Virus record (IMG/VR): IMGVR_UViG_3300042465_005589
Coordinates: 62,001 to 126,000 of that record
Strand: one strand, 5' to 3'
Length of the DNA stretch: 64,000 nucleotides
Positions 1 through 52,550 of the stretch are shown here, in pieces. Below the pieces are notes generated by a model. The model searched no databases, was not told the origin of the DNA, and saw only the letters and a program-made list of their open reading frames with translations. Position 1 is the first letter of the stretch. Each line of letters begins with the position of its first letter. Position numbers and translations under genes: made by a program.

Positions 1-78
1 AAAACTATACCCATAATGAACGATGTTAAATCTACCATAATTTCTTTTTTTTTATTTGTTTATTATTGAACTGATAAT

Positions 79-459
79 TTATTGTTTAACTCCTCCCCAC
101 AAATAACCATCACCATATGAAGTACATATTTCTTCACCGGGTTGGATTGTTTGTAAAGAGTAAAATTGAAATGCTCGTTTAGTTGGGTGATTTCTCCACA
201 TTGCGTTATTAGTATCTGAATGATTATATATACATCCATACCCTAATGGTATCACATATTCAGTCCAATTTGGTCCTTGAGGATAACAAAATCTATAATC
301 ATCAAGTAATCTTGATTGTTCCCATTTTTTTGTTGGTAAAGTCACTAAATGACATTCTTCAATCAACTCATCTTTTTCAATGACATCAATTGCAAATACC
401 CCCATTCCTTTTCCTGGAGAGGGTTTAATCTCTATTTTGGTCGGTATTAATAAATTCAT
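79..459 (-). CDS. SET domain protein (putative lysine methyltransferase)
   Basis: GKGMGVFA, GYGCIYNHS and GEEICTSYG SET motifs. Confidence 0.9.
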   Translation of the reverse strand: MNLLIPTKIEIKPSPGKGMGVFAIDVIEKDELIEECHLVTLPTKKWEQSRLLDDYRFCYPQGPNWTEYVIPLGYGCIYNHSDTNNAMWRNHPTKRAFQFYSLQTIQPGEEICTSYGDGYLWGGVKQ

Positions 460-484
460 AAGTAAATTATAATAAAAAAAGAGA

Positions 485-922
485 CTATTTCAAGTCTCTT
501 TTCATATCTCTTTCAATGTCCCGAGATTTAATACTGTCTCGTTTATCGTATGTCTTCTTTCCTTTGGCAAGAGCAATCTCCATCTTAACTAACCCGGTAT
601 CATTTATGAATACACGATAAGGAACGATGGTGGTTCCGTTGATTAGTTCGTTCTCCAATTTATTAAGTTCTTTTCGTTTAAGTAATAGTTTTCTATCCTT
701 TACGGTCTCGTGAAAGGACCCGAACCCATAATCAGAGATATTCATTCCCTTTATAAACAACTCACCATTGTTGAAGTAACAAAACCCCTCAGATATGGAG
801 ACCTTTCCCTGACGGATGGACTTTACCTCTGAACCAACTAGTTTGATTCCCACGATTAGTGTCTGTAGGAATGAATACTCAAACTTGGCTTTCTTATTGA
901 CTATGTTAATTGATTTTTTCAT
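485..922 (-). CDS. smpB: SsrA-binding protein SmpB
   Basis: NKKAKFEY, GIKLVGSEVKSIR, RKLLLKRKE, LAKGKKTYDKR. Confidence 0.97.
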   Translation of the reverse strand: MKKSINIVNKKAKFEYSFLQTLIVGIKLVGSEVKSIRQGKVSISEGFCYFNNGELFIKGMNISDYGFGSFHETVKDRKLLLKRKELNKLENELINGTTIVPYRVFINDTGLVKMEIALAKGKKTYDKRDSIKSRDIERDMKRDLK

Positions 923-999
923 ACGACAAAGATAATGATTTTTTTTCTAATAATTATGACTTTTTATACTTTTTGAGATATTTATAATAAAGAGATATT

Positions 1000-1152
1000 A
1001 TGAACCCAAGAAAAAAAGAAGAAGATAAAAAAGTAAAATTTGGAATCTGTGTTGACCCGGTAATATACCAAAAAATGGAAGATGAGATGATTAACAAATC
1101 TCGCCTGATTGAAACACTATTGAAAGAACATTATGGAAAAAAAAGTTTGTAG
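1000..1152 (+). CDS. 50-aa ribbon-helix-helix-like protein upstream of HNH endonuclease
   Basis: Read by hand: MNPRKKEEDKKVKFGICVDPVIYQKMEDEMINKSRLIETLLKEHYGKKSL; overlaps the HNH start. Confidence 0.65.
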   Translation: MNPRKKEEDKKVKFGICVDPVIYQKMEDEMINKSRLIETLLKEHYGKKSL

Positions 1153-1753
1153 TAAGTGTAAAGAAGAAAAAGAGGTTTGCGAGTTTGGGAAACGAAAAGA
1201 TTCCAAAGATGGTCTGCGAAGTGAATGTAAAAGTTGTGCTAAAGAATGGAGATTAAAGAATCGAGAACATTTATTAAAATATAATAAAAATTGGAAAAAT
1301 TCTAATTCAGAACACGTTTATCATTATCATAAAAAATATAAAGAAGAAAATGATGAAGAATTAAAGAAATATCAAAAAGAATGGTATCTACAAAATAAAA
1401 ATATTCTTAATGAAAAAATAAAACTAAAAAAATTAACAAACCCAATATTTTTAGTTTCGTGTTCAGTTAGAAAAAGAATGTCCGAGTATATTAAAAAAAA
1501 TAATATATTGAAAAAAAATAAAACTTTTAAAGTTGTTGGATTGAACCCTATTGAATTATCTCATTACTTGGAAACTCAATTTACAGAAGGAATGTCTTGG
1601 AATAACTATGGAAAGTATGGGTGGCATATTGACCATATAATTCCGTTATCTTCAGCAAAAAATGAAAATGAACTTTATAAGTTATGTCATTATACTAATC
1701 TCCAACCACTATGGGCAGAAGACAATCTAAAAAAATCAAATAAACTATTATAA
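1133..1753 (+). CDS. Free-standing HNH endonuclease with N-terminal CxxC-CxxC zinc finger
   Basis: CSKC..CKSC; WHIDHIIPLS..HYTNLQPLWAEDNLKK. Confidence 0.88.
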   Translation: MEKKVCSKCKEEKEVCEFGKRKDSKDGLRSECKSCAKEWRLKNREHLLKYNKNWKNSNSEHVYHYHKKYKEENDEELKKYQKEWYLQNKNILNEKIKLKKLTNPIFLVSCSVRKRMSEYIKKNNILKKNKTFKVVGLNPIELSHYLETQFTEGMSWNNYGKYGWHIDHIIPLSSAKNENELYKLCHYTNLQPLWAEDNLKKSNKLL

Positions 1754-1757
1754 ACAA

Positions 1758-1791
1758 AAAAAGGTGTCACAAATTAATGTAACACCTTTTT
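1758..1791. terminator. Bidirectional intrinsic terminator
   Basis: AAAAAGGTGT..ACACCTTTTT between the converging HNH gene and the large ncRNA. Confidence 0.7.
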
Positions 1792-1794
1792 GGC

Positions 1795-2674
1795 TTAATA
1801 CGATGAGAATACTCGTCTTATTGAGAATCTTCGGAAGGATTATTGTTTCCCTTCTTTTCCACCATCTTTTGAATGGTAATCCTCATTGCCGATTGGTTAG
1901 ACCAATCACTCCTTAAGATATCATTTACTCTCTCATTATTCAACTCTCTTTAACCTTGCGAGCTAACTCCGGATTCGACTCCGTAGAGGTTTTTGGCGAG
2001 AATACATTCAGACTTGCGGTCATCCTGTGCAACGAACAGCTCGTTACTATGTAGGCAACTTGTCAATGATACCTGACAGACACTTTTGCTTTTTTCTGTT
2101 TAGTTTTTCACCATATTGAAAATAGTTATTGTGTTGTGGATGTGTCCAAGTAGAGGTCTGTCTTAGGCTTCATCATCTTTTGGACGAAGAAATACCAACC
2201 TACTCGGTAGAGCGTCCCCACTCTCATATTTTAAGAATTCTTCGAATCAAAATCTTGGTAGATGTTTGATAAGGATAATGACAGCACCACCTGTTACTTA
2301 TCTTGTCTTTCGACTTTAAGATTTCTCTCATATTGGAACCCGTAATAATTAAGTTGGATAACCTAACTTCTTACTTGATTCCTATCACTTATTCCTATTG
2401 GAGTTCCCCCCTCAACCGAAAGACCCACATCTCCCGGTCACCTAACCACTTTCTCTAAAGCGTTGCCCTCAATACTGAAGGTCAGATGGTATGTGACTTG
2501 TATACTCGAGTCCCATTTCTGAGACCGCAAACCTGTTAACACAACAGATTCACTTTAGCCCGGTTTCCCGGTTTATTTAAGGATGATATACCACCCATTA
2601 TCGTTTTTTACTCCACCGAAGTGGGTAAAGGATAATCTAAAATTTCTAAGAACGTCTTGAGGTTTCCCTCATTT
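1795..2674 (-). ncRNA. ~880-nt highly structured RNA, GOLLD-like candidate
   Basis: No ORF >=60 aa, raised GC, many GNRA/UUCG hairpins, own promoter and terminator, beside tRNA-like genes. Confidence 0.65.
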
Positions 2675-2680
2675 GTTTTA

Positions 2681-2711
2681 CAAAGGTAAGTGATTTTTTT
2701 CATTTGTCAAA
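2681..2711 (-). promoter_or_regulatory. Bacteroidota housekeeping-sigma promoter driving the large ncRNA
   Basis: TTTG..TACCTTTG. Confidence 0.75.
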
Positions 2712-2743
2712 CACTTTTGTAATTTTTTTTTATTTTTTTTTAA

Positions 2744-2973
2744 TCTGTGATAAGACCTTAAGATTTACTCATTCGTAGGTCACCCATTCTGTACTACCTA
2801 AAACTCGCCTTTAACATCCGTTCTACCCAAACCATCGTTTATTTCTTGTTAACCTCACGGTTATCTTTGAGTACCTCCTCAACTGTAATCTGATAGGGAC
2901 TCCATATTGCTCGTCATTTCTGACTCCCTATGGGGTTCTGCTGTAATAGGTCTATCTGCTATCTTATCACAGA
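2744..2973 (-). ncRNA. 230-nt structured RNA, weak RNase P RNA catalytic-domain resemblance
   Basis: 12-bp closing stem TCTGTGATAAGA/TCTTATCACAGA; GAGGAGGTACTC and ACAGAATGGGTGACCT can pair as a P4-like helix. Confidence 0.45.
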
Positions 2974-3121
2974 ATAAAATTTGTAAACCCTTGAGAAGGA
3001 ATCTGTGGGCGTGTATAGGATTACTTGTCTACCTTCTATCCATCCGGGTCTCTCACCCGACGAAACTTTACTACAAATAAATTCGTAGTTCCATCCCCCA
3101 CCAAATTATGGTTTACTTTTG

Positions 3122-3211
3122 TGGTATCAGATGGGCTCGAACCACCGGCACAGAGTCTTTCGTTACTCCTGCTCTACCAAAGGAGATAAATCTCCACTGA
3201 GCTATAATACC
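3122..3211 (-). ncRNA. tRNA-like RNA with hairpin inserted in D-loop and 8-nt anticodon loop
   Basis: Acceptor GGTATTA/TGATACC, T-loop GTTCGAG, D-loop insert GGAGATTTATCTCC. Confidence 0.6.
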
Positions 3212-3219
3212 ATATATTT

Positions 3220-3297
3220 TAGTGGACGTATGCTCTACCATCTGAGCTACGGGGTTAAGACCGGAGGGATTTGAATCCTCGACACAACGTCCACCTA
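3220..3297 (-). ncRNA. Circularly permuted tRNA-like RNA (YrlA/Y RNA-like topology)
   Basis: Order: stem GTGGACGT, T-arm, closed acceptor-like hairpin, D-arm TAGCTCAGATGGTAGAGC, stem ACGTCCAC. Confidence 0.65.
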
Positions 3298-3332
3298 TTT
3301 TTTCAATAATTTTAAGAACTTTATTTCTTCTA

Positions 3333-3364
3333 CAAAGATAATACTTTTATTTTAATATATCAAA
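3333..3364 (-). promoter_or_regulatory. Bacteroidota-type promoter
   Basis: TTTG..TATCTTTG. Confidence 0.75.
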
Positions 3365-3523
3365 TTATTTTAAAAATAATTCTAACAATTTTGTAATACC
3401 TAAACCAAAACACATTCCGGCAACAAAATAACTGAATGCGGGATTTCTACCTTTTTCTTTTTGAATTTTTGCACCGTATAGATTTATAACCGTCAATCCG
3501 AATTGTATTAATACTATTTCCAT
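3365..3523 (-). CDS. Small 2-TM membrane protein
   Basis: 52-aa hydrophobic ORF read by hand, downstream of a promoter at 3550-3580. Confidence 0.5.
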   Translation of the reverse strand: MEIVLIQFGLTVINLYGAKIQKEKGRNPAFSYFVAGMCFGLGITKLLELFLK

Positions 3524-3735
3524 AATTTGTTTCTTTTTTAATTAGAGTACAAAGATAATACTATTTTTTAATCTACCAAATCTTTTTTTGAATTTTCATC
3601 AATTTTTTTTAATTCACTAATAAGTTGGTTACCGTACCACTCTAACCATTCAATATGGGTAAACTTTGAATCCGGATTATCCGACATAAAGTTTTTGTAT
3701 TGTGTTTCTAATGTTGCCATATAATTTAATTTTAG

Positions 3736-3813
3736 TAGTCAGAACAGGATTCGAACCTGTGTGTCCACATAAGGGGTTTCCTTACCGTGCATCTCCAATG
3801 TGCTACCTGACTA
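3736..3813 (-). ncRNA. tRNA shell 1 (AGTCAGG acceptor; non-canonical anticodon arm)
   Basis: CAGGTTCGAATCCTG T-arm plus acceptor AGTCAGG/TCTGACT. Confidence 0.6.
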
Positions 3814-4054
3814 AATTGTGAATCAAAAAATTTCAGCCTTAGCTCAAAAATATCATCACACGATAAGACTTCTTTGTATGGTTCAGGTATCTAAACAACC
3901 TAGGTCATTCTGAATCTTCATATCATTAAAGCAATACCTTTTTTAAGGTTCAAATCCGAACTGTAACTCATTTATTCCTTAACTTACCTAAATAAGTCTC
4001 TATGTTTATTCATAGCCCCTGTAGATACTACAGGTAGTTGACATCGTCGATTTG

Positions 4055-4200
4055 TAGTCAGGACAGGATTCGAACCTGTAAGGTATAACCACTAAAATCG
4101 TGGAGATGGAGGTCAATTCCTCTTTTACAATACCAACCTGTGAGCGTCTACCATCAGGAATTAGCTTTATCAGTGCTACCCTTGTTCCGCCACCTGACTA
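4055..4200 (-). ncRNA. tRNA shell 2 (146 nt, Leu-type D-arm with insert, cargo in place of anticodon arm)
   Basis: Acceptor AGTCAGG/CCTGACT, GTGGCGGAA..TGGTAGACGC, T-arm. Confidence 0.65.
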
Positions 4201-4204
4201 TTTA

Positions 4205-4367
4205 AAAACTAATGGTGTGTTGTTACACCAAGATACGAGGTTCGTTACCACCTACGTGTGACACCCAATAACGATTTCCCTGGATGTTGACTTTTTGTCC
4301 GTACACTCCCACAAGGGGACAACTCCTTAGAAGATGGATACTATCAATCCCACTTCCCATTAGTTTT
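4205..4367 (-). ncRNA. Orphan structured RNA, 163 nt
   Basis: 11-bp closing stem AAAACTAATGG/CCATTAGTTTT between tRNA shells. Confidence 0.45.
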
Positions 4368-4368
4368 G

Positions 4369-4471
4369 TAGTCAGGACAGGATTCGAACCTGTTCCGTCT
4401 TTGCCATAAAGAGTCGGCCTTACCGTTACTCAACCTTGGGGAGGTGATACCAACCAATGGTCTCCTAACTA
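4369..4471 (-). ncRNA. tRNA shell 3
   Basis: Same acceptor and T-arm as 4055-4200, unrelated middle. Confidence 0.6.
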
Positions 4472-4484
4472 TTTTATTATGGTA

Positions 4485-4515
4485 CAAAGATAATACTTTA
4501 TTTTAATTTACCAAA
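4485..4515 (-). promoter_or_regulatory. Bacteroidota-type promoter driving tRNA-shell cluster
   Basis: TTTG..TATCTTTG. Confidence 0.75.
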
Positions 4516-4589
4516 TTTATTTTATAAAAATCTGATAAAAATCCGTCTTTTAATATTTTTCCGGATATTTATATATAAATAACATTATA

Positions 4590-4742
4590 ATGGGTAGACC
4601 TAAATTAAAAGAAGACGATAAAAAAGGTAAATTAGGTATAACAATATCTAAAGAACTTATCAATAAAATAAACAAAATTACAAATAATAAATCATTATTT
4701 ATTGAAGAATTAATTATTAAATATTTCAAGAATGGAGAATAA
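4590..4742 (+). CDS. 50-aa RHH-like protein upstream of HNH endonuclease
   Basis: MGRPKLKEDDKKGKLGITISKELINKINKITNNKSLFIEELIIKYFKNGE; paralog of 1000-1152. Confidence 0.65.
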   Translation: MGRPKLKEDDKKGKLGITISKELINKINKITNNKSLFIEELIIKYFKNGE

Positions 4743-5352
4743 AATATGTTCTAAATGTAAAGTTGAAAAACTATTATGTGATTTTCATAATAATAAAAAA
4801 GAGAAGAGTGGTAAAAACTGTCAATGTAAAAGTTGTGTAAAACTTTGTTATAAATATATTAAAAAAATACCCATTATAAATTTAGAAGAATCTATTAAAA
4901 AAGAAAATTTAAGAAAATTAAAAAAAAGTGTGTATAATAAAAAGTATCGTGAAGAAAATCGTGAAATATTAAAGAAGAAAAAAAATATTTATAAACAAAT
5001 TAGGATAAATGAAAATCCTTTAGTTAAACTACGTTTTAGGATTTCCAATAACATAACTGTTTCGTTAAAACGAAATGGTGGTAAAAAATTAAGTAAAACT
5101 ACTAATATTTTAGGGTGTTCTTTTGATGATTTTAAGAAACATATTGAATTATTATGGGAATCTTGGATGAGTTGGGAAAATTATGGTAACCCAAAAGATG
5201 GTATTTATCAACCAAATAAAACTTGGGATTTAGACCATATAACTCCATCCTCAAAGGCAACATCTGAAGAAGAAATACTTAAATTAAATCATTATAGTAA
5301 CTTTCAACCATTATGTTCTTATAATAACAGATTCATAAAAAAAGGTGACTAA
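4732..5352 (+). CDS. Free-standing HNH endonuclease with zinc finger
   Basis: CSKC..CKSC; WDLDHITPSS..HYSNFQPLCSYNN; paralog of 1133-1753. Confidence 0.88.
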   Translation: MENKICSKCKVEKLLCDFHNNKKEKSGKNCQCKSCVKLCYKYIKKIPIINLEESIKKENLRKLKKSVYNKKYREENREILKKKKNIYKQIRINENPLVKLRFRISNNITVSLKRNGGKKLSKTTNILGCSFDDFKKHIELLWESWMSWENYGNPKDGIYQPNKTWDLDHITPSSKATSEEEILKLNHYSNFQPLCSYNNRFIKKGD

Positions 5353-5386
5353 TGTCACCTTTTTTATAATTTTAACAAAAAACTAT

Positions 5387-5489
5387 GTCAATCCACCAAA
5401 ACTGTTAAAATCTCCTACTTACCTATATGGGCTCGGCCATCCCGTTGTCATATTGATTTACCTGAAACTTCTTTGGGTTGTTGATTGAC
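5387..5489 (-). ncRNA. Possible orphan structured RNA, ~100 nt
   Basis: GTCAATC/GATTGAC closing stem, raised GC. Confidence 0.3.
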
Positions 5490-5513
5490 CACTCCCACTT
5501 ACTCAAGTAGTTT

Positions 5514-5768
5514 TTACATACTCATCATCCAACCCATTCGGTTTTGTTCTTGATACTGAGAATAAGTACATTTTCTCATTGTCTTATAATCCGGTCTCAA
5601 CTTAACGTGAGTTGGGTATTTTTTTTCGTGTTCTTTGTGTTCTCTCACCACTTTAGCGTAAGCCTCTCTTTTACTTGGTGCCCACACGTCATTAAATCCT
5701 CCACCTATCCAATTGAATAAATATAAATACTCCCCGTTAACACTTCTATATAATTTCTCTTTAGTCAT
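5514..5768 (-). CDS. Hypothetical protein
   Basis: 84-aa ORF on the local coding strand. Confidence 0.7.
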   Translation of the reverse strand: MTKEKLYRSVNGEYLYLFNWIGGGFNDVWAPSKREAYAKVVREHKEHEKKYPTHVKLRPDYKTMRKCTYSQYQEQNRMGWMMSM

Positions 5769-5771
5769 AAT

Positions 5772-5942
5772 TTATCCGTGATTTTCTTTATGTAGTAAGG
5801 TTCCAAAAGCATTTGAACCAATTGAAATTAGTAAATATCCAAACCAAATACCGTTTGTTTTAATAGTTAATCCAACAACCACAAATCCAATTATAACCAA
5901 TAGACTTAATAAAGATAATGTGTGTTTTGATAATTTTGTCAT
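5772..5942 (-). CDS. Small 2-TM membrane protein
   Basis: 56-aa hydrophobic ORF read by hand, promoter at 5966-5996. Confidence 0.55.
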   Translation of the reverse strand: MTKLSKHTLSLLSLLVIIGFVVVGLTIKTNGIWFGYLLISIGSNAFGTLLHKENHG

Positions 5943-5996
5943 AATAATTAGTTTTAAATTCGGTACAAAGATAATACTTATTTTTAATCCACCAAA

Positions 5997-6218
5997 TTAT
6001 TTTTCATAAATTAAATCAGTTTTTTCACAACCATCTTTTAATTCAAGTAAACCATTTCTACATTGTCTTTTGATAATGTCTAAAATAACTGATAATTCGT
6101 CCGATTTTTTTCTATTTATTTTCCCCCAATCTAATGAACCCCATTTAAAAGTGGATTCTATCGTTTTTAGTTCTAAAATAAACTCCTTTTTTTCAGTATT
6201 AGTTTGCCAATTACTCAT
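5997..6218 (-). CDS. Hypothetical protein
   Basis: 73-aa ORF after promoter 6243-6273. Confidence 0.6.
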   Translation of the reverse strand: MSNWQTNTEKKEFILELKTIESTFKWGSLDWGKINRKKSDELSVILDIIKRQCRNGLLELKDGCEKTDLIYEK

Positions 6219-6406
6219 AATTTTATATTTTTAAATCCGGTACAAAGATAAGCATTAAATCGACATCTCCAAATATTATTTTAATTTTTTTCAAAAAAAT
6301 TTTTTACGATAACGATTACGTAAATTAATTTGGCATAAAACTTGATATTACGGATTTGTTAACCTATTTATTTAACGAAATTAAACATTATTTAAAACAA
6401 ATTATT

Positions 6407-6571
6407 ATGAAAAAAGTATTTTTAGCCCTTGCAGTTATTGCAACGTTATCTTTAACATCTTGTAAACACGAAGTGAAACAAGACGAAGCAACTGAAGTTG
6501 TTGATGATTCAACACAAGTAGATTCCACATCAGTTGATACCACTCAAGTAGATACTACTCAAGTGAAGTAA
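6407..6571 (+). CDS. Small lipoprotein
   Basis: MKKVFLALAVIATLSLTSC lipobox, acidic D/S/T-rich tail. Confidence 0.8.
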   Translation: MKKVFLALAVIATLSLTSCKHEVKQDEATEVVDDSTQVDSTSVDTTQVDTTQVK

Positions 6572-6574
6572 AAC

Positions 6575-6606
6575 AAAAAACCCCTCTTAACGGAGGGGTT
6601 ATTTTA
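6575..6606. terminator. Bidirectional terminator
   Basis: AAAAAACCCCTC..GAGGGGTT between converging genes. Confidence 0.7.
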
Positions 6607-7206
6607 TTTAAGTAAGTTTCTAATTTTACCTATTTCTTTATTTACTCTATGTTCTTTTAATCCTAAAGCCGTCCCAAATGCTGCTCCGATTTGTGAGTTC
6701 ATAATATCACTAGCAGTACTATCGGCATCACCACCAGGTGGGATTGTTGTTGTTGTTGTTGTTGAACCATCAGCCGCTGGAGCGATTTGTTCTTTATTTG
6801 AAACATGTACATGGTTATAATGGTCATCCATTTGCCATAAAACAGATTTTGTATTACCACCTTCACTATTTCTTTTATATCCAAGTTGTTCTAACTGAAT
6901 TACAAAACTATCAACATTTCTTTTGTTAGATGGGTCTTTAACGGCAACACCATTAACTTTACTTATATCTACAGCACTTCCGGTTGAGTGTCTACTAACA
7001 GCTCCTGAATCTGTTGTTTCACTATGGTCAGACACCGCAGATGTTATATTCACGTTAACATTAGCGTTTTTAGATGCGGTACAAATATCTTTTAATAATG
7101 CGTCGTTTACTAAATCTAATCCAATATCAGAATCCACGCTTATATAAGAACATCCTGATGAATTTAGTTTAATATTTGCTTCTAATAATTGTATTAATTT
7201 TTTCAT
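6604..7206 (-). CDS. M15/Hedgehog-fold zinc peptidase, putative peptidoglycan hydrolase
   Basis: SRHSTGSAVDI (H-x6-D) and HYNHVHVS. Confidence 0.7.
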   Translation of the reverse strand: MKKLIQLLEANIKLNSSGCSYISVDSDIGLDLVNDALLKDICTASKNANVNVNITSAVSDHSETTDSGAVSRHSTGSAVDISKVNGVAVKDPSNKRNVDSFVIQLEQLGYKRNSEGGNTKSVLWQMDDHYNHVHVSNKEQIAPAADGSTTTTTTIPPGGDADSTASDIMNSQIGAAFGTALGLKEHRVNKEIGKIRNLLK

Positions 7207-7207
7207 A

Positions 7208-7813
7208 TTATTGTTGTAAATGTGTCATTAAAACACCTCCTATTGATGCCGAATGTTGTAGTAAATGATTTATTGATTCAATGTCCAATTTAGATTTTCT
7301 TTTTGTATAATCTAACCCTAATGTCCCGATGAATTTACCTTCAATAGTTTTTATTGCAAATAAATATCCGGATTTACAACCAGTATCTTCAGCAATATAT
7401 TTTAAACCAAAAGTCGCAATAGTTTCATCTTTATAATCGGAAATTTCAATCACATCGGTTTCTAATAACTGATTTATTGAACGGCTGAATAAATTAACTG
7501 GAATATTATGAAAATTTGATTGAACTGATGTTATTCCCGGACCAACAACTTCATACATAATACTGAATTTTGCTATAGATTTTCCTGTTGGATAAAAGTT
7601 ACCCCCATTATGGAATTGTGTTATCCAAACTCTATCTGATTTAAATTCGTCTTTAATATGTTCCAATTTTGTCATCACAAGTTCACTAACTTTTAGTGTT
7701 TCCAACACCATATCAGGCTTTTCAGTTTTTTTATCCAATTTATTCTTAATGAATAATAATAGGAGAGGTCCCAATACCCCCGTGATAAACGCCACTATTA
7801 TAGATACACTCAT
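7208..7813 (-). CDS. N-terminal TM plus GAF-like domain protein, T4 gpT-like holin architecture
   Basis: One TM helix, then DRVWITQFHNGG..FIGTLGLDY. Confidence 0.55.
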   Translation of the reverse strand: MSVSIIVAFITGVLGPLLLLFIKNKLDKKTEKPDMVLETLKVSELVMTKLEHIKDEFKSDRVWITQFHNGGNFYPTGKSIAKFSIMYEVVGPGITSVQSNFHNIPVNLFSRSINQLLETDVIEISDYKDETIATFGLKYIAEDTGCKSGYLFAIKTIEGKFIGTLGLDYTKRKSKLDIESINHLLQHSASIGGVLMTHLQQ

Positions 7814-7885
7814 AATTTTAACTTAATATTTTATAACTTATAAATAGTAAAAAAACAAAAAAAGTGGGATATTACTCCCACTTTT

Positions 7886-8911
7886 TTACAACTTTTTAAA
7901 TTCCGGTCTTATTAGATTCCATATGATTTCAGAGTAATTTTTCTTATCAAACATTCTAAACAGAATCCCTGACATATGTTTAGGTTGAGTGAATACCCAC
8001 TCAGCAAACTCTTTTCTATCTTCTATGGGTTCTTTATCGTTATATTTACCATACATCATACCATCAAACTTTTTACCAGCATCCTCAGATATTTGGAAAT
8101 GACTATATCTTAAATCTCTAACATAAGATTTAATTTTATTGTAAAATTCGTCTGGAACATCTTTTAATATTTCCATAACATCCTCACCATTTTTCAAATA
8201 CTCCCAAACTCCGGTTGTGGTAACATTGGTCATAATTTTGTGAAGACGAAGATACTCAACACCTTTAACTTTAACTCTATCCCCATTGGAGAACTTCACC
8301 ACAAACCCTTCTTGGTCGTTTTTAACCATTTCTTTGAGTTGTTTGTAGTCGTTTATACCATCGTATTTTTTAACCACATCAAACCCGTATTCTCTCCACA
8401 TTTCCACATCATATTCTTTACCATTCTTATCAAAGGTTCCCAATAGGACTAACCCTTCATAATCACCGTAATCTACTACCACGCGATTCTGAGGAAATAA
8501 AATTTCAAAACAAAAAGTCAGATGTCTGAACATTATATCGGTGTTGTATTTTTTAAGTAATTCTCTACCCTTAATTGCTTGGTCTGAACCAAATGACCCA
8601 CGAGTCGCTAATATCCATTGTCCTTCGTACCAAAAAACTATTAAAAGTGAGCCATCCATTTTTTCATACACCTCAAAGTTTTCAGTTGGTTCAAATTTTC
8701 CTTCCTCTATGTTGAAGAATTTATCAAAAGGTTTTGCTACGATATCTCCGGTGTGGTCGGTAACTAAACCTCTACACATCAAAAGAGTTTCGTCCCACAA
8801 ATTTTCATACTGGACTTTTTCGCTATAGTTCCATATAGTTAATGGGAGGTATGGATGTACTTGTTTGTAAAGTAATCCGTCTTCGTAATATTTGTTTAGT
8901 TTTTCTATCAT
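7886..8911 (-). CDS. RNA ligase, T4 Rnl1 family
   Basis: KPFDKFFN, YEKMDGS, FEIL, EGFVV, VKVK nucleotidyltransferase motifs. Confidence 0.92.
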   Translation of the reverse strand: MIEKLNKYYEDGLLYKQVHPYLPLTIWNYSEKVQYENLWDETLLMCRGLVTDHTGDIVAKPFDKFFNIEEGKFEPTENFEVYEKMDGSLLIVFWYEGQWILATRGSFGSDQAIKGRELLKKYNTDIMFRHLTFCFEILFPQNRVVVDYGDYEGLVLLGTFDKNGKEYDVEMWREYGFDVVKKYDGINDYKQLKEMVKNDQEGFVVKFSNGDRVKVKGVEYLRLHKIMTNVTTTGVWEYLKNGEDVMEILKDVPDEFYNKIKSYVRDLRYSHFQISEDAGKKFDGMMYGKYNDKEPIEDRKEFAEWVFTQPKHMSGILFRMFDKKNYSEIIWNLIRPEFKKL

Positions 8912-11375: not shown

Positions 11376-12038
11376 TTATTTTCTTTTTTTTCCGTCTTCA
11401 GTTATTACTTCATCTATGTGGTGGTCCCCATCCATATTTGAACGAATCTCTCTTTCCTTAACAATCTTAATTACGTTACTTAAATCGTATGGTGAAAAGA
11501 ACAAACTACCATCCATCCCTACATCCATTCTACGACCTTTACCAAAAATTTTTGTTTGAGGTAAATGACAGTGTCCGTGTAAGTGGATGTGTCCTTTGTT
11601 TAATCCATCCCAAGAATCAATAGGGAAGTGTATTAAAACCAATGTCTCAAACTTATACATCAATTTTGTGTAATGATTAACACTCGCAAACAATTCTTGA
11701 CAATCCTCTCGGTTGTTCTCAATGTGGTGGTCGTGATTACCTAATATAAGATGAATCTCTTTACACACAATTCTGTCTCTAAAAATTTTTACATTCTCAA
11801 ACCCACCAAAACTCCAATCTCCTAAGTGAATCAAAACATCATCTTGTCCAACAACACTATTAATGTTATTCACTATCATTTCATTCATCTCACCAATTGA
11901 GTCAAAATCTCTTGTTTGAGATATTGGAATACTCCCATCAGGTAATCTCCACGCAGTTACTCCACGACATATATTCTTATGTCCAAAGTGGGTATCGGAT
12001 ATAATCCAAACTTTTCTTTCTTTATCTATTTTTATCAT
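11376..12038 (-). CDS. Calcineurin-like metallophosphoesterase
   Basis: SDTHFGH, LGDW, GNHD, HGHCH. Confidence 0.92.
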   Translation of the reverse strand: MIKIDKERKVWIISDTHFGHKNICRGVTAWRLPDGSIPISQTRDFDSIGEMNEMIVNNINSVVGQDDVLIHLGDWSFGGFENVKIFRDRIVCKEIHLILGNHDHHIENNREDCQELFASVNHYTKLMYKFETLVLIHFPIDSWDGLNKGHIHLHGHCHLPQTKIFGKGRRMDVGMDGSLFFSPYDLSNVIKIVKEREIRSNMDGDHHIDEVITEDGKKRK

Positions 12039-12247
12039 TTTATACGTTCTTTGATTATTAATTTTTTTGCTCTATCAAATAAAGTGTCAAAATACTTACC
12101 AAATTCTTCATCAGAAACTACTTTATTAAAAAAGTCATCAAAAGTAATAATTTCACCACTTTCATCCAAATGAAGTTTATATGCTCTCTCAACTATTTTT
12201 TCACCTTCCGGACCCATTATACGTGTGGTATTTGGACTCTCACACAA
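12035..12247 (-). CDS. Hypothetical protein
   Basis: 70-aa ORF in operon. Confidence 0.55.
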   Translation of the reverse strand: MCESPNTTRIMGPEGEKIVERAYKLHLDESGEIITFDDFFNKVVSDEEFGKYFDTLFDRAKKLIIKERIK

Positions 12248-12687
12248 GTTTGTGCTTGACCCTCGTTCATATAAAAATTGTTCAAATATCCCATTATGTT
12301 CGCACTTCCGATTGGGTTTGCAGAATGAACATATACAATTGGAAATACAAATTTGTCAGCCTTTCTTTCACTTCTACTCATATTGAATCTACCTTCATTT
12401 GTATTGTGAAACAACGCAACCAAGAACTTAGAGGCATCATATCCGGTTTTCTCATCAATATTGTTGTAATCCAAAGTATAATTTGGCGAAACATTGTTGA
12501 AATACTCCTTCATTGCTGTATCCCCCAAATCGTGGTCCAACGAAATTATATCAATATTCTCCAATCCAATCTCATTAACTTTACTAACAAATTCATCGTA
12601 ATTTCTTACAACTATCCAATTATCTCCGGTTGGAGTTCTTACGTCATCTAAATAGATACGATAAGGTGGTTTTACATTATTTTCCAT
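12217..12687 (-). CDS. Cyclic-phosphate-processing receiver-like domain protein
   Basis: IYLDDVRTP..WIVVRNYDEF..ISLDHDLG..HSANPIG. Confidence 0.82.
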   Translation of the reverse strand: MENNVKPPYRIYLDDVRTPTGDNWIVVRNYDEFVSKVNEIGLENIDIISLDHDLGDTAMKEYFNNVSPNYTLDYNNIDEKTGYDASKFLVALFHNTNEGRFNMSRSERKADKFVFPIVYVHSANPIGSANIMGYLNNFYMNEGQAQTCVRVQIPHV

Positions 12688-50681: not shown

Positions 50682-52550
50682 TTATTCAGGTTTAACTTCT
50701 TCAAACTCTACATCTGAAGCGTTTATATCTGATTCCGGTGTCTCACTCTCATTTACACTATTGTATAATTCCTGTGTGATGGTTTGGAACTTTTGAGTAA
50801 GTTCTTCCATAATCGTTTTAACATTTTCCACATCTTTATTAGAATGAGATTCTTTCAAAGTATCAAGAATAGTTGTTATTTCTGTTTTTTGTTCTTCAGA
50901 AATCTTATCCTCTAAATCCGTTAAAGATTTACCTGTTTGGAATATCAGGTTGTCAGCAGAGTTTAATGTATCCACATCTTCTTTAACTTTTTTGTCCGCT
51001 TCAGCATTTTCTTCAGCTTCAGCCTTCATTCTTTCAATGTCTTCTTGAGATAGTCCCGTTGAACCCTCAATTCTAATTGATTGTGTTTTGTTTGTTGCTT
51101 TGTCAACCGCAGATACGTTGATGATACCATTCGCATCAATATCAAAGATAACCTCAATCTGAGGAACACCTCTCATCGATGGTGGTAAACCATCTAAATG
51201 GAATCTTCCCATCGTTCTGTTGTCTTTCGCCATTGGTCTCTCCCCTTGTAAGACGTGAATCTCCACAGAAGGTTGATTATCAACAGCCGTTGAGAAAACT
51301 TGTGACTTTTTGGTTGGGATTGTGGTATTTGATTCAATAAGTCGAGTTAAAATCCCACCCATCGTTTCAATACCTAATGAAAGTGGTGTTACGTCTAATA
51401 ACAACACGTCTTTCACATCACCAGCCAATACACCCCCTTGAATAGCCGCTCCTAACGCAACTACTTCATCCGGATTAACACCTTTTGATGGTTCTTTACC
51501 AAAGAACTTCTTAACCGCCTCTTGTATTGCTGGGATTCTTGTTGTTCCACCAACAAGGATAACCTCATCAATATCGGAAATCTTAAGTTTCGCGTTTTTC
51601 AATGCCGTTTTACAAGGGTCAATCGTTCTTTTGATTAAATCAGTAGCAAGTTGTTCAAACTTAGCTCTTGATAAAGTTTTAACCAAGTGTTTTGGTCCGG
51701 TCGCATCAGCACTTAAATAAGGTAAGTTGATTTCTGTCTGAGGAGATGAAGATAATTCAACCTTCGCTTTCTCAGCACCTTCTCTTAACCTTTGTAATGC
51801 CATTGCGTCTTTTGAGATGTCTATACCACCATTATCGTTCTTAAATTCTTCAACCAAGTAATCGATAATGACTCTGTCAAAGTCGTCCCCTCCTAAGTGA
51901 GTGTCTCCATCGGTAGATAATACCTCAAACACACCTCCACCTAAGTCAAGAATAGACACGTCGTGAGTTCCCCCTCCGCAGTCAAACACAACAATTTTAC
52001 TATCACCCTTTTTGTCAAGACCGTACGCAAGAGCCGCCGCGGTTGGTTCGTTGATAATACGACGAACATTTAATCCGGCAATTTCACCCGCCTCTTTTGT
52101 AGCCTGACGTTGGGCGTCGTTAAAGTAAGCTGGAACGGTGATTACCGCATCAGTTACTGATTCACCCAAATAATCTTCAGCAGTTTGTTTCATCTTTTGT
52201 AAGATGATTGCCGATAATTCTTGTGGTGAGTATTTTCTATCATCAATTTGAACTCTTGGTTGTGAGTTTTCATTTACAACTGAGTAAGGAACTTTTCCAA
52301 TTTCGTTTTTACTCTCGTTATAGGTGGAACCCATAAATCGTTTAATTGATGATATTGTTTTAGTCGGATTGGTTACCGCCTGTCTTTTTGCCGGGTCACC
52401 AACTTTTCTTTCTCCTTCGTTGATGAAACCGATGATTGAAGGTGTTGTTCTTTTACCTTCTGAATTTGCTATTACAACAGGTTCGTTCCCCTCCATTACA
52501 GAGACACACGAGTTTGTTGTTCCTAAGTCAATTCCAATAATTTTTCCCAT
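50682..52550 (-). CDS. dnaK: Chaperone DnaK (Hsp70)
   Basis: [30 protein letters not shown]; full length. Confidence 0.98.

What the first reader, a model, noticed from the sequence alone, without database searches (positions are those of the whole stretch)
1795..2674. ~880-nt ornate ncRNA (GOLLD-like) with its own promoter and terminator
Seen: no ORF >=60 aa, raised GC, a host-type promoter at 2681-2711 and a terminator at 1758-1791. Minus-strand hairpins include CCGGGAAACCGG, CCACTTCGGTGG, GACCGCAAGTC, GATTGGTCTAACCAATC and two CAAAAG-loop stems. Known: GOLLD RNAs are ~800 nt, occur in phages and lake metagenomes near tRNAs, and have unknown function. Family assignment is inference.
Basis: partly seen in the sequence, partly recalled or inferred. 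Interest (0 to 1): 0.8.

Follow-up and report, generated by a model that had tools for sequence, protein, structure and literature searches.

The report
GOLLD RNA gene in jumbo phage

Summary
The observation and the interpretation both hold. Window 1800-2207 (-) matches the Rfam GOLLD model (RF02032) end to end at 306 bits (threshold 150, E 1e-86). That model covers only the conserved 3' domain. The remaining ~470 nt (2208-2680) form the 5' domain: they are colinear in about 40 phage contigs at 70-100% identity, with 96 predicted base pairs that are 96.7% canonical, 73 of them with compensatory changes. The loops that build the solved GOLLD nanocages are present, and the J13/15-L20 kissing loop is complementary in 35 of 35 homologs across three variants. 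The terminator (1791-1758) is confirmed. The promoter has a perfect -35 (TTGACA, 2710-2705) and a weak -10 (TACCTT, 2688-2683). The consensus scanner missed it, but it is conserved in 27 of 35 homologs and belongs to a promoter class with 14 copies in the window. The host genome is an uncultured jumbo phage of roughly 305-320 kb. This is a new member of a known family, so interest is modest. One possibly new point: in this phage lineage GOLLD sits in a conserved tmRNA-SmpB-GOLLD-tRNA island. In the window an HNH endonuclease gene has inserted between GOLLD and SmpB, and the tmRNA lies about 380 nt outside the window.

The parts
2705..2710 (-). -35 hexamer TTGACA of the GOLLD promoter, preceded by an A-rich tract
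   Evidence: Sequence. The TTGnnn block is conserved in 27 of 35 homologs at 16-17 nt from the -10 block.
2680..2688 (-). -10 block TACCTT (2688-2683) plus conserved TGT; the predicted transcription start is about 2676-2679
   Evidence: The core TAnCTTTGT occurs 19 times in the window against 4.7 expected. The two-block motif occurs 14 times against 2.9 expected. The start site is inferred from spacing only.
2659..2670 (-). First hairpin GAGG-GAAA-CCUC at the 5' end of the RNA
   Evidence: The outermost pair changes G-C, A-U, C-G and U-A among homologs in alignment A1.
2208..2680 (-). GOLLD 5' domain, which the Rfam model does not cover
   Evidence: Colinear homology at 70-100% identity in about 40 IMG/VR contigs. 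RNAalifold predicts 96 pairs, 96.7% canonical, 73 with compensatory changes; slid controls give 34-44% and 22-32.
1800..2207 (-). GOLLD conserved 3' domain (P14-P27)
   Evidence: Rfam RF02032, 306.3 bits, gathering score 150, E 1e-86, model 1-416 of 416. 76 pairs, 98.7% canonical, 46 compensatory.
2091..2146 (-). Variable A-rich linker, the region that is disordered inside the cage in solved GOLLD structures; no embedded tRNA here
   Evidence: Unpaired stretch in the Rfam alignment. It is length- and sequence-variable in A1. ARAGORN finds no tRNA inside 1795-2674.
2088..2089 (-). J13/15 dinucleotide GC that pairs with L20; this is intermolecular bridge B7 in the env-38 structure
   Evidence: Complementary to L20 in 35 of 35 sequences: GC:GC 28, GG:CC 5, UC:GA 2. 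The bridge is described in PMC12286853.
2011..2021 (-). P20/L20 hairpin GAC-CGCAA-GUC; the kissing nucleotides are G2017 and C2016
2065..2074 (-). 5' strand of the long-range helix (square brackets in the Rfam structure line); its partner is 1916-1925
   Evidence: 10 pairs, 98% canonical, 7 with compensatory changes; slid controls give 25-39% and 0-2.
1916..1925 (-). 3' strand of the long-range helix
1970..1983 (-). P21a hairpin; loop GUCGAA holds the self-complementary UCGA (inner CG)
   Evidence: Other clades have CGCAA (inner GC). This is the GC/CG switch that PMC12286853 reports for symmetric kissing loop B8.
1950..1966 (-). P21b hairpin; loop CGCAA with a central GC (symmetric kissing loop B9 in env-38)
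   Evidence: P21b is present in env-38 (14-mer) and absent in the S. agalactiae GOLLD (12-mer), per PMC12990946.
1758..1791 (-). Intrinsic terminator, probably bidirectional; it also closes the convergent HNH ORF
   Evidence: Scanner call with 14 pairs and a T-run. There is an A-run on one side and a T-run on the other. Compensatory changes in L042, L038 and L032.
1133..1753 (+). HNH / endonuclease VII-type homing endonuclease ORF, inserted between the GOLLD terminator and SmpB (context, not part of the RNA)
   Evidence: PHROG 1035, E 6.6e-20; weak Pfam HNH match. It is absent in L032, L038, L062, L048, L013 and L046, where SmpB starts 35 nt after the terminator.
485..922 (-). SmpB gene, a conserved downstream neighbour of GOLLD in this clade (context)
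   Evidence: Pfam SmpB, E 3.3e-48. Synteny.

Best explanation
Shown: window ~2677 to ~1753 (minus strand) is a gene for a GOLLD RNA. The structured core of 871 nt (2670-1800) consists of a 5' domain (2680-2208), an A-rich variable linker (2146-2091) and the family's conserved 3' domain (2207-1800). Both domains are under strong selection for base pairing.

Inferred from sequence and conservation: the RNA is made as its own transcript. It starts at a sigma-70-like promoter of a class this phage uses repeatedly (-35 TTGACA, 16-nt spacer, -10 TACCTT followed by TGT). It ends at an intrinsic, probably bidirectional terminator (1791-1758).

Inferred by homology to the solved GOLLD structures (env-38 14-mer; S. 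agalactiae 12-mer): the RNA folds into two separate domains, and copies of it join into a closed, hollow, dihedral RNA-only cage. The joins are kissing loops and A-minor contacts. The loops used for this are all present here, and the first covaries: J13/15 with L20, and the self-complementary L21a and L21b. Because P21a and P21b are both present, an env-38-like assembly of about 14 copies is the better guess.

Hypothesis only: the cellular role of GOLLD is not known for any member. The gene lies inside a phage island devoted to translation and RNA repair: tmRNA, SmpB, 23 tRNAs, an Rnl1-type RNA ligase and a cyclic-phosphate-processing protein. My working model is that the cage acts during lytic growth on a component of the translation apparatus, holding or shielding tRNA, tmRNA or ribosomes.
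For: - Rfam GOLLD full-length hit, 306.3 bits against a gathering score of 150; no competing family at E<=1.
- 5' domain: homologs at 70-100% identity over about 510 nt in about 40 viral contigs. 96 pairs, 96.7% canonical, 73 compensatory; slid controls about 40% and 22-32.
- 3' domain: 76 pairs, 98.7% canonical, 46 compensatory. Long-range helix: 7 of 10 pairs compensatory.
- Kissing loop B7 is complementary in 35 of 35 sequences across three variants. L21a and L21b carry palindromic cores, matching the bridges described in PMC12286853 and PMC12990946.
- The promoter motif is conserved in 27 of 35 homologs and enriched in the window, 14 copies against 2.9 expected. The terminator is called by the scanner.
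- Four contigs from different metagenome samples carry 100% identical copies.
- Context: SmpB, RNA ligase, cREC domain, tRNAs. A tmRNA lies just outside the window on identical contigs.
Against: - No transcript data exist, so the promoter, start site and terminator use are predictions. The -10 hexamer matches the consensus at only 3 of 6 positions, and the scanner did not call the promoter.
- There is no terminator between the upstream RNA genes and GOLLD, so read-through transcripts are possible.
- Cage formation and stoichiometry are extrapolated from two solved homologs. I could not align the window to their sequences, and published stoichiometry varies among family members (10, 12 or 14).
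- I could not map the RNAalifold helices of the 5' domain one-to-one onto the published P1-P13.
- The link to translation rests on gene neighbourhood within one related phage lineage. It may only reflect clustering of all RNA genes in one island.
Confidence: 0.9

Rival explanations
1. It is a GOLLD RNA, but it is not an independent transcription unit. It would be made mainly by read-through from the upstream RNA genes (promoter at 3363, tRNA-like RNA at 3121-3307, unknown element 2742-2971) and released by processing. The TTGACA motif would be weak or inactive.
For: No terminator was found between 3363 and 2711. The -10 is poor. In some relatives (L001, L002, L052, L056, L033) GOLLD lacks the motif and follows a tRNA, and in many relatives a tRNA-Met abuts its 3' end. 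GOLLD can therefore be part of processed polycistronic RNA transcripts.
Against: The two-block motif is conserved directly upstream of GOLLD in 27 of 35 homologs, with conserved spacing and position relative to the first hairpin. The same motif precedes many other genes in the window on the sense strand.
Confidence: 0.15
2. The RNA acts mainly in cis as a giant leader or regulator of the downstream SmpB gene, rather than as a free RNA.
For: In six relatives SmpB starts only 35 nt after the GOLLD terminator, on the same strand.
Against: A strong terminator separates them. SmpB has its own TATCTTTGT promoter-like core right before the ATG. In the window an oppositely oriented HNH gene of about 620 bp lies between them. 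Most GOLLD relatives at 70-76% identity are followed by tRNA-Met, not SmpB. Free GOLLD RNAs assemble on their own (PMC12286853).
Confidence: 0.04
3. It is not GOLLD but another large structured RNA (ROOL, OLE, a group I or II intron) or a decayed protein-coding gene.
For: None beyond size and the absence of ORFs.
Against: No hit from any other family in 1795-2674 at E<=1. GOLLD scores twice its threshold. The substitution pattern is compensatory in helices, not codon-like. The longest ORF is 51 aa.
Confidence: 0.01

Closest known systems
GOLLD RNA env-38 (marine metagenome; cryo-EM 14-mer nanocage, PDB 9MEE; Kretsch et al. 2025, PMC12286853)
   Same: Same Rfam family. Similar length (833 nt against about 871 nt). 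Two-domain layout with an internal variable linker. The J13/15-L20 kissing loop, and both P21a and P21b with palindromic loop cores, are present. Phage or environmental origin near tRNA genes.
   Different: env-38 lies downstream of a tRNA-Met, whereas the window copy has its own promoter and an intrinsic terminator. L21a here has an inner CG (UCGA) where other clades have GC. I could not align the two sequences directly, so 5'-domain equivalence helix by helix is untested.
Streptococcus agalactiae GOLLD (12-mer, PDB 9L0R; reviewed in PMC12990946)
   Same: Same family and the same conserved 3' domain.
   Different: The S. agalactiae RNA is shorter (700 nt) and lacks P9, P11a-c and P21b. The window copy retains P21b and has a long 5' domain, so it is closer to the env-38 type. 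The S. agalactiae copy is chromosomal or prophage-borne in a Gram-positive pathogen; this one is in an uncultured jumbo phage.
Mycobacterium tRNA-array GOLLD (PMC6582537; Morgado et al. 2020)
   Same: GOLLD embedded in a large horizontally transferred tRNA cluster together with an HNH endonuclease gene.
   Different: The mycobacterial copies carry a (pseudo)tRNA inside the linker; the window copy has none. My profile of the window-type 5' domain finds nothing in the mycobacterial loci, and the 3'-domain profile finds them only weakly.
ROOL RNA (Rfam; 8-mer nanocage)
   Same: A large ornate phage or prophage RNA near tRNA islands that forms an RNA-only cage; probably an analogous role.
   Different: Unrelated sequence and secondary structure. 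No ROOL hit in the window.

Membership tests
GOLLD RNA (Rfam RF02032) | Match to the family covariance model above the curated gathering score, over the whole model | tested here: met
   306.3 bits against 150, E 1e-86, model positions 1-416 of 416, window 2207-1800 (-).
GOLLD RNA (Rfam RF02032) | Giant size (about 700-850 nt or more) with a less conserved 5' domain joined to the conserved 3' domain by a variable linker | tested here: met
   Structured core 2670-1800, 871 nt. The 5' domain is colinear in 35 non-redundant homologs, with 73 of 96 pairs compensatory. The linker varies in length and sequence.
GOLLD RNA (Rfam RF02032) | Covarying J13/15-L20 loop-linker pairing (bridge B7) and the long-range helix of the 3' domain | tested here: met
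   B7 is complementary in 35 of 35 sequences with 3 variants. Long-range helix: 10 bp, 98% canonical, 7 compensatory.
GOLLD RNA (Rfam RF02032) | Self-complementary loops L21a and L21b used for symmetric kissing (bridges B8, B9) | tested here: met
   L21a is GUCGAA (UCGA) and L21b is CGCAA (GC). The GC/CG alternation between clades matches the published description. This is a sequence-level test only.
GOLLD RNA (Rfam RF02032) | Encoded in phages or prophages, near tRNA genes | tested here: met
   23 tRNA genes in the window, all on the same strand. Identical copies lie on IMG/VR viral contigs of up to 318 kb. Homing endonucleases, SmpB and tmRNA are neighbours.
GOLLD RNA (Rfam RF02032) | Assembly into a closed RNA-only homo-oligomeric cage | not testable with these tools
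   Needs in vitro transcription plus mass photometry or cryo-EM.
GOLLD RNA (Rfam RF02032) | Expression that rises during phage lytic growth | not testable with these tools
   Uncultured phage; no transcript data available here.
ROOL, OLE, group I / group II introns | Match to the respective Rfam covariance model | tested here: not met
   No hit in 1795-2674 at gathering scores or at E<=1 with permissive filters.

The most novel reading that the evidence does not exclude
In this lineage of freshwater jumbo phages, GOLLD is functionally coupled to phage-encoded trans-translation. The cage would work with tmRNA-SmpB, and perhaps the adjoining tRNA-Met, for example by storing, shielding or delivering them, or by docking on ribosomes.

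The basis is a conserved gene order: tmRNA (convergent), SmpB, GOLLD, then the tRNA array. 17 of 29 GOLLD loci with enough flank carry a convergent tmRNA 0.2-5.6 kb downstream. In six loci SmpB starts 35 nt after the GOLLD terminator. I found no paper that reports this link.

My evidence does not exclude the simpler reading, that all RNA genes of the phage merely share one island.
Probability: 0.12. Interest if true: 0.75.

Novelty: new member of a known kind. Interest (0 to 1): 0.3.

Why it matters
GOLLD is one of the largest bacterial and phage non-coding RNAs without a known function. In 2025 it was shown to form RNA-only cages larger than a ribosome. This locus adds nothing new in kind, but it is a clean, complete example with defined ends, and I found about 60 close and distant relatives.

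That set provides three things:
- A deep covariation alignment for the poorly conserved 5' domain.
- Natural variants of the cage-forming kissing loops (GC:GC, GG:CC, UC:GA).
- A conserved neighbourhood (tmRNA, SmpB, tRNA-Met, RNA-repair genes) that narrows the functional hypotheses to translation and ribosome rescue.

These are leads for experiments, not discoveries in themselves.

Tried and rejected
- Consensus promoter scan of 1000-4000 did not call the GOLLD promoter. I kept the promoter on the strength of conservation, not on the scan.
- Phage database (INPHARED, blastn): only two hits, unannotated megaphage records of about 640 kb (LR756502, LR745206) at 66-71% identity. This gave no annotation or host.
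- Genome scan with the subtype motif: 0 hits in about 185,000 species genomes.
- Genome scan with a looser family motif: 120 loci, nearly all chance matches. Only three Mycobacterium loci are real GOLLDs by profile search. None has the window-type 5' domain or a nearby tmRNA, so there is no host hint.
- tmRNA inside the window: none by ARAGORN, Rfam or my nhmmer profile. It lies just outside the window.
- PHROG and Pfam searches of seven large window proteins found nothing, so the phage could not be classified.
- The original GOLLD paper (Weinberg 2009) and Morgado 2020 are not held in the library. I could not check whether they mention tmRNA or SmpB neighbours.
- Direct comparison with the env-38 or S. 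agalactiae GOLLD sequences was not possible, because I had no tool reference for those RNA sequences and did not type them in.
- The unknown element at 2742-2971 is too conserved for a covariation test.

Full report
OBSERVATION. On the minus strand, window 1795-2674 has no ORF of 60 aa or more; the longest are 51, 50 and 46 aa. Its GC content is 0.35-0.465, against 0.20-0.30 in the flanks. The intrinsic terminator at 1791..1758 is called by the scanner with 14 pairs, a 6-nt loop and a T-run. The proposed promoter has a perfect TTGACA at 2710-2705. After a 16-nt spacer the -10 is TACCTT (2688-2683), too weak for the consensus scanner, which did not report it.

IDENTITY. A scan of the whole window against Rfam 15 gives one GOLLD hit (RF02032) at 2207-1800 (-). 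It scores 306.3 bits against a gathering score of 150, with E 1e-86, and covers model positions 1-416 of 416. A permissive scan of 1-8000 at E<=1 finds no other family inside the feature: no ROOL, no OLE and no intron models. The published descriptions explain why the model covers only half of the feature. [quoted passage not shown]

THE 5' HALF. A conserved 3'-domain motif retrieved 60 IMG/VR contigs. BLAST of the window's 5' part (2720-2208) against them gives colinear matches over about 500 nt at 70-100% identity in about 40 loci. Four copies are 100% identical, on contigs from different samples of up to 318 kb. Two megaphage records of about 640 kb also match, at 66-71%.

I aligned 35 non-redundant full-length sequences as A1. 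RNAalifold on the 5' domain predicts 18 helices with 96 pairs. Of the cells, 96.7% are canonical, and 73 pairs show changes on both sides. Sliding the partners by 1-3 columns gives 34-44% canonical and 22-32 pairs. The structure was derived from the same alignment, so the controls flatter it somewhat, but the margin is very large. The 3' domain gives 76 pairs, 98.7% canonical, 46 compensatory. The long-range helix 2074-2065/1925-1916 gives 10 pairs, 98% canonical, 7 compensatory. Rfam confirms GOLLD at 275-332 bits in all 12 relatives tested.

CAGE-FORMING CONTACTS. Cryo-EM work showed that GOLLD forms closed RNA-only cages. These are held together by, among other contacts, a J13/15-L20 kissing loop (bridge B7) and symmetric kissing of L21a and L21b (bridges B8 and B9).
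- In A1 the J13/15 dinucleotide (window G2089 C2088) and the L20 dinucleotide (G2017 C2016) are complementary in 35 of 35 sequences: GC:GC 28 times, GG:CC 5 times and UC:GA twice.
- L21a in the window is GUCGAA, with the self-complementary UCGA. Other clades have CGCAA. This is the GC/CG alternation described for B8.
- L21b is CGCAA, with a central GC.
- P21b is present, as in the 14-mer env-38 RNA, and unlike the 12-mer S. agalactiae RNA, which lacks it.
- No tRNA is embedded in the linker.

That this RNA assembles into a cage, and how many copies join, is inferred by homology. It is not shown.

ENDS OF THE RNA. Directly upstream of the first hairpin (GAGG-GAAA-CCUC, 2670-2659, whose outer pair takes four different Watson-Crick forms in A1) lies a two-block motif, TTGnnn-N16-17-TAnCTTTGTAAAA. 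It is present in 27 of 35 homologs, with near-variants in two more, and it is duplicated in tandem in eight loci. In the window the motif occurs 14 times against 2.9 expected from Markov shuffles (maximum 9 in 200). Thirteen copies are on the minus strand, in front of small genes and RNA genes, at 3363, 3579, 4514, 5995, 6272, 17194, 18182, 18341, 26075 and elsewhere. It is therefore a promoter class of this phage, and the GOLLD copy has the best -35.

The homologs without the motif follow a tRNA instead (L001, L002, L052, L056, L033). At the 3' end the window's clade (82% identity or more) has the terminator, with compensatory changes in L042, L038 and L032. Many relatives at 70-76% identity instead have a tRNA-Met(CAT) 2-25 nt after the last GOLLD hairpin. 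This recalls the association of env-38 with a Met-tRNA, which lies upstream of that RNA. The predicted primary transcript runs from about 2677 to about 1753, roughly 925 nt.

CONTEXT. The window carries:
- 23 tRNA genes, all on the minus strand.
- SmpB (485-922) and a SET-domain gene (79-459).
- An Rnl1-type RNA ligase, a metallophosphatase, a cyclic-phosphate-processing receiver-domain protein, a DNA methylase, GIY-YIG, HNH and NUMOD3 homing endonucleases, and a full-length DnaK.

Large proteins have no Pfam or PHROG hit. Related contigs reach 305-322 kb. A bacterial-type tmRNA, SmpB, sigma-70-like promoters and intrinsic terminators all point to a jumbo bacteriophage. I could not determine the host.

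SYNTENY WITH TRANS-TRANSLATION GENES. In L032, L038, L062, L048, L013 and L046, SmpB begins 35 nt after the GOLLD terminator, on the same strand. In the window a 206-aa HNH / endonuclease VII-type ORF (1133-1753, +; PHROG 1035, E 6.6e-20) is inserted there, on the opposite strand. A 47%-identical paralog occupies the same site in L045.

Rfam finds tmRNA genes above threshold near GOLLD in L050, L044, L028, L025 and L032. It also finds one on contigs L063 and L066, whose overlap with the window is identical (0 mismatches over 1647 and 713 nt). That places a tmRNA at window-equivalent coordinates -774 to -378, on the plus strand. An nhmmer profile of these tmRNAs finds one in 25 of the 60 GOLLD loci. 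Among the 29 loci with at least 4.5 kb of downstream flank, 17 have it, always convergent and 0.2-5.6 kb from the GOLLD 3' end.

No paper in the searchable library links GOLLD with tmRNA or SmpB in phages. The 2009 discovery paper was not available to me. The loci are related to one another, so this is one conserved arrangement rather than many independent events. It may reflect no more than clustering of all RNA genes in one island.

VERDICT. The feature is a complete, evidently functional GOLLD RNA gene in an uncultured freshwater-type jumbo phage: a new member of a known family. Its molecular behaviour, self-assembly into an RNA cage, is inferred from solved homologs and from conservation and covariation of the contact loops. 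Its biological role remains unknown. The translation-linked model is a hypothesis resting on neighbourhood alone.

Noticed in passing
window 485-922 (-) and, outside the window, equivalent coordinates -774..-378 (+); L063:10464-10860, L066:566-962: Conserved tmRNA (convergent) - SmpB - GOLLD - tRNA-array order. The tmRNA lies about 380 nt beyond the left edge of the window, on contigs whose overlap with the window is 100% identical. 17 of 29 GOLLD loci with enough flank have a convergent tmRNA downstream.
   Followed up: yes
window 1133-1753 (+) and 4732-5352 (+): Two 206-aa HNH / endonuclease VII-type ORFs, 31% identical to each other, low in GC and on the strand opposite to all neighbours. 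The first is an insertion between the GOLLD terminator and SmpB. A 47%-identical paralog sits at the same site in L045, which suggests a homing hot spot.
   Followed up: partly
window 2742-2971 (-): ORF-free conserved element closed by an 11-13-bp stem (CUGUGAUAAGA / UCUUAUCACAG). Fold z-score -3.3; no Rfam hit at E<=1. It is 98.8% identical in L045, where GOLLD is only 82% identical, and it sits at a different genomic place in L016, with one compensatory change in the stem. It exists as a short form of about 130 nt and a long form of about 242 nt in 21 copies (20 viral-contig loci with the 23-mer core plus a variant in L016). Likely an undescribed small RNA, but too invariant for a covariation test.
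   Followed up: partly
window 3121-3363 (-): A promoter-motif copy (3363-3332) is followed by a weak Y-RNA-like (YrlA) hit at 3203-3307 (34 bits, threshold 69) and a 91-nt 'tRNA-Thr(GGT)'. The homologs of that tRNA call are read by ARAGORN as Thr, Pro or undetermined. It may therefore be a tRNA-like RNA rather than a decoding tRNA. The unit is conserved at 82-90% in eight relatives.
   Followed up: partly
window 4051-4154 and 4364-4471 (-): Two further ORF-free blocks conserved at 90-98% in relatives. They overlap sub-threshold Rfam hits: tRNA at 26.6 bits over 145 nt, and preQ1 riboswitch at 27.4 bits against a threshold of 39. The whole of 2720-4700 lacks ORFs of 60 aa or more and looks like a run of small RNA genes.
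   Followed up: no
window 923-936 (-): The SmpB ATG (922) is preceded directly by TATCTTTGTCGT, the same -10-like core as the GOLLD promoter. The same junction occurs in L032 and L038. If that core is a -10 element, the SmpB mRNA would be leaderless or nearly so.
   Followed up: no
window-wide, e.g. 3579, 4514, 5995, 6272, 17194, 18182, 18341, 26075 (-): Phage promoter class TTGGTA-N17-TATCTTTGTACC: 14 copies against 2.9 expected, 13 of them on the minus strand.
   Followed up: yes
window 79-459 (-): The SET-domain methyltransferase gene is present here and in L055 but absent at the same position in L032 and L038, so it is an insertion or deletion next to SmpB.
   Followed up: partly
window 7886-8911, 11376-12038, 12217-12687 (-); 50682-52550 (-): An RNA-repair set lies beside the tRNA array: T4 Rnl1-type RNA ligase, metallophosphatase and a cyclic-phosphate-processing receiver domain. 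This suggests defence of tRNAs against host anticodon nucleases. There is also a full-length phage DnaK/Hsp70 (852 bits).
   Followed up: no
L007, L008, L010, L014, L023, L025, L028, L039, L058 (GOLLD 3' ends): In relatives at 70-76% identity a tRNA-Met(CAT) starts 2-25 nt after the last GOLLD hairpin. There the GOLLD 3' end is probably made by tRNA processing rather than by a terminator.
   Followed up: partly
L016, L026, L011, L054, L044, L041, L008, L037 (upstream of GOLLD): Tandem duplication of the promoter motif. The first copy is followed by a short hairpin or by an insert of 100-300 nt before the second copy and GOLLD. The content of the inserts was not examined.
   Followed up: no
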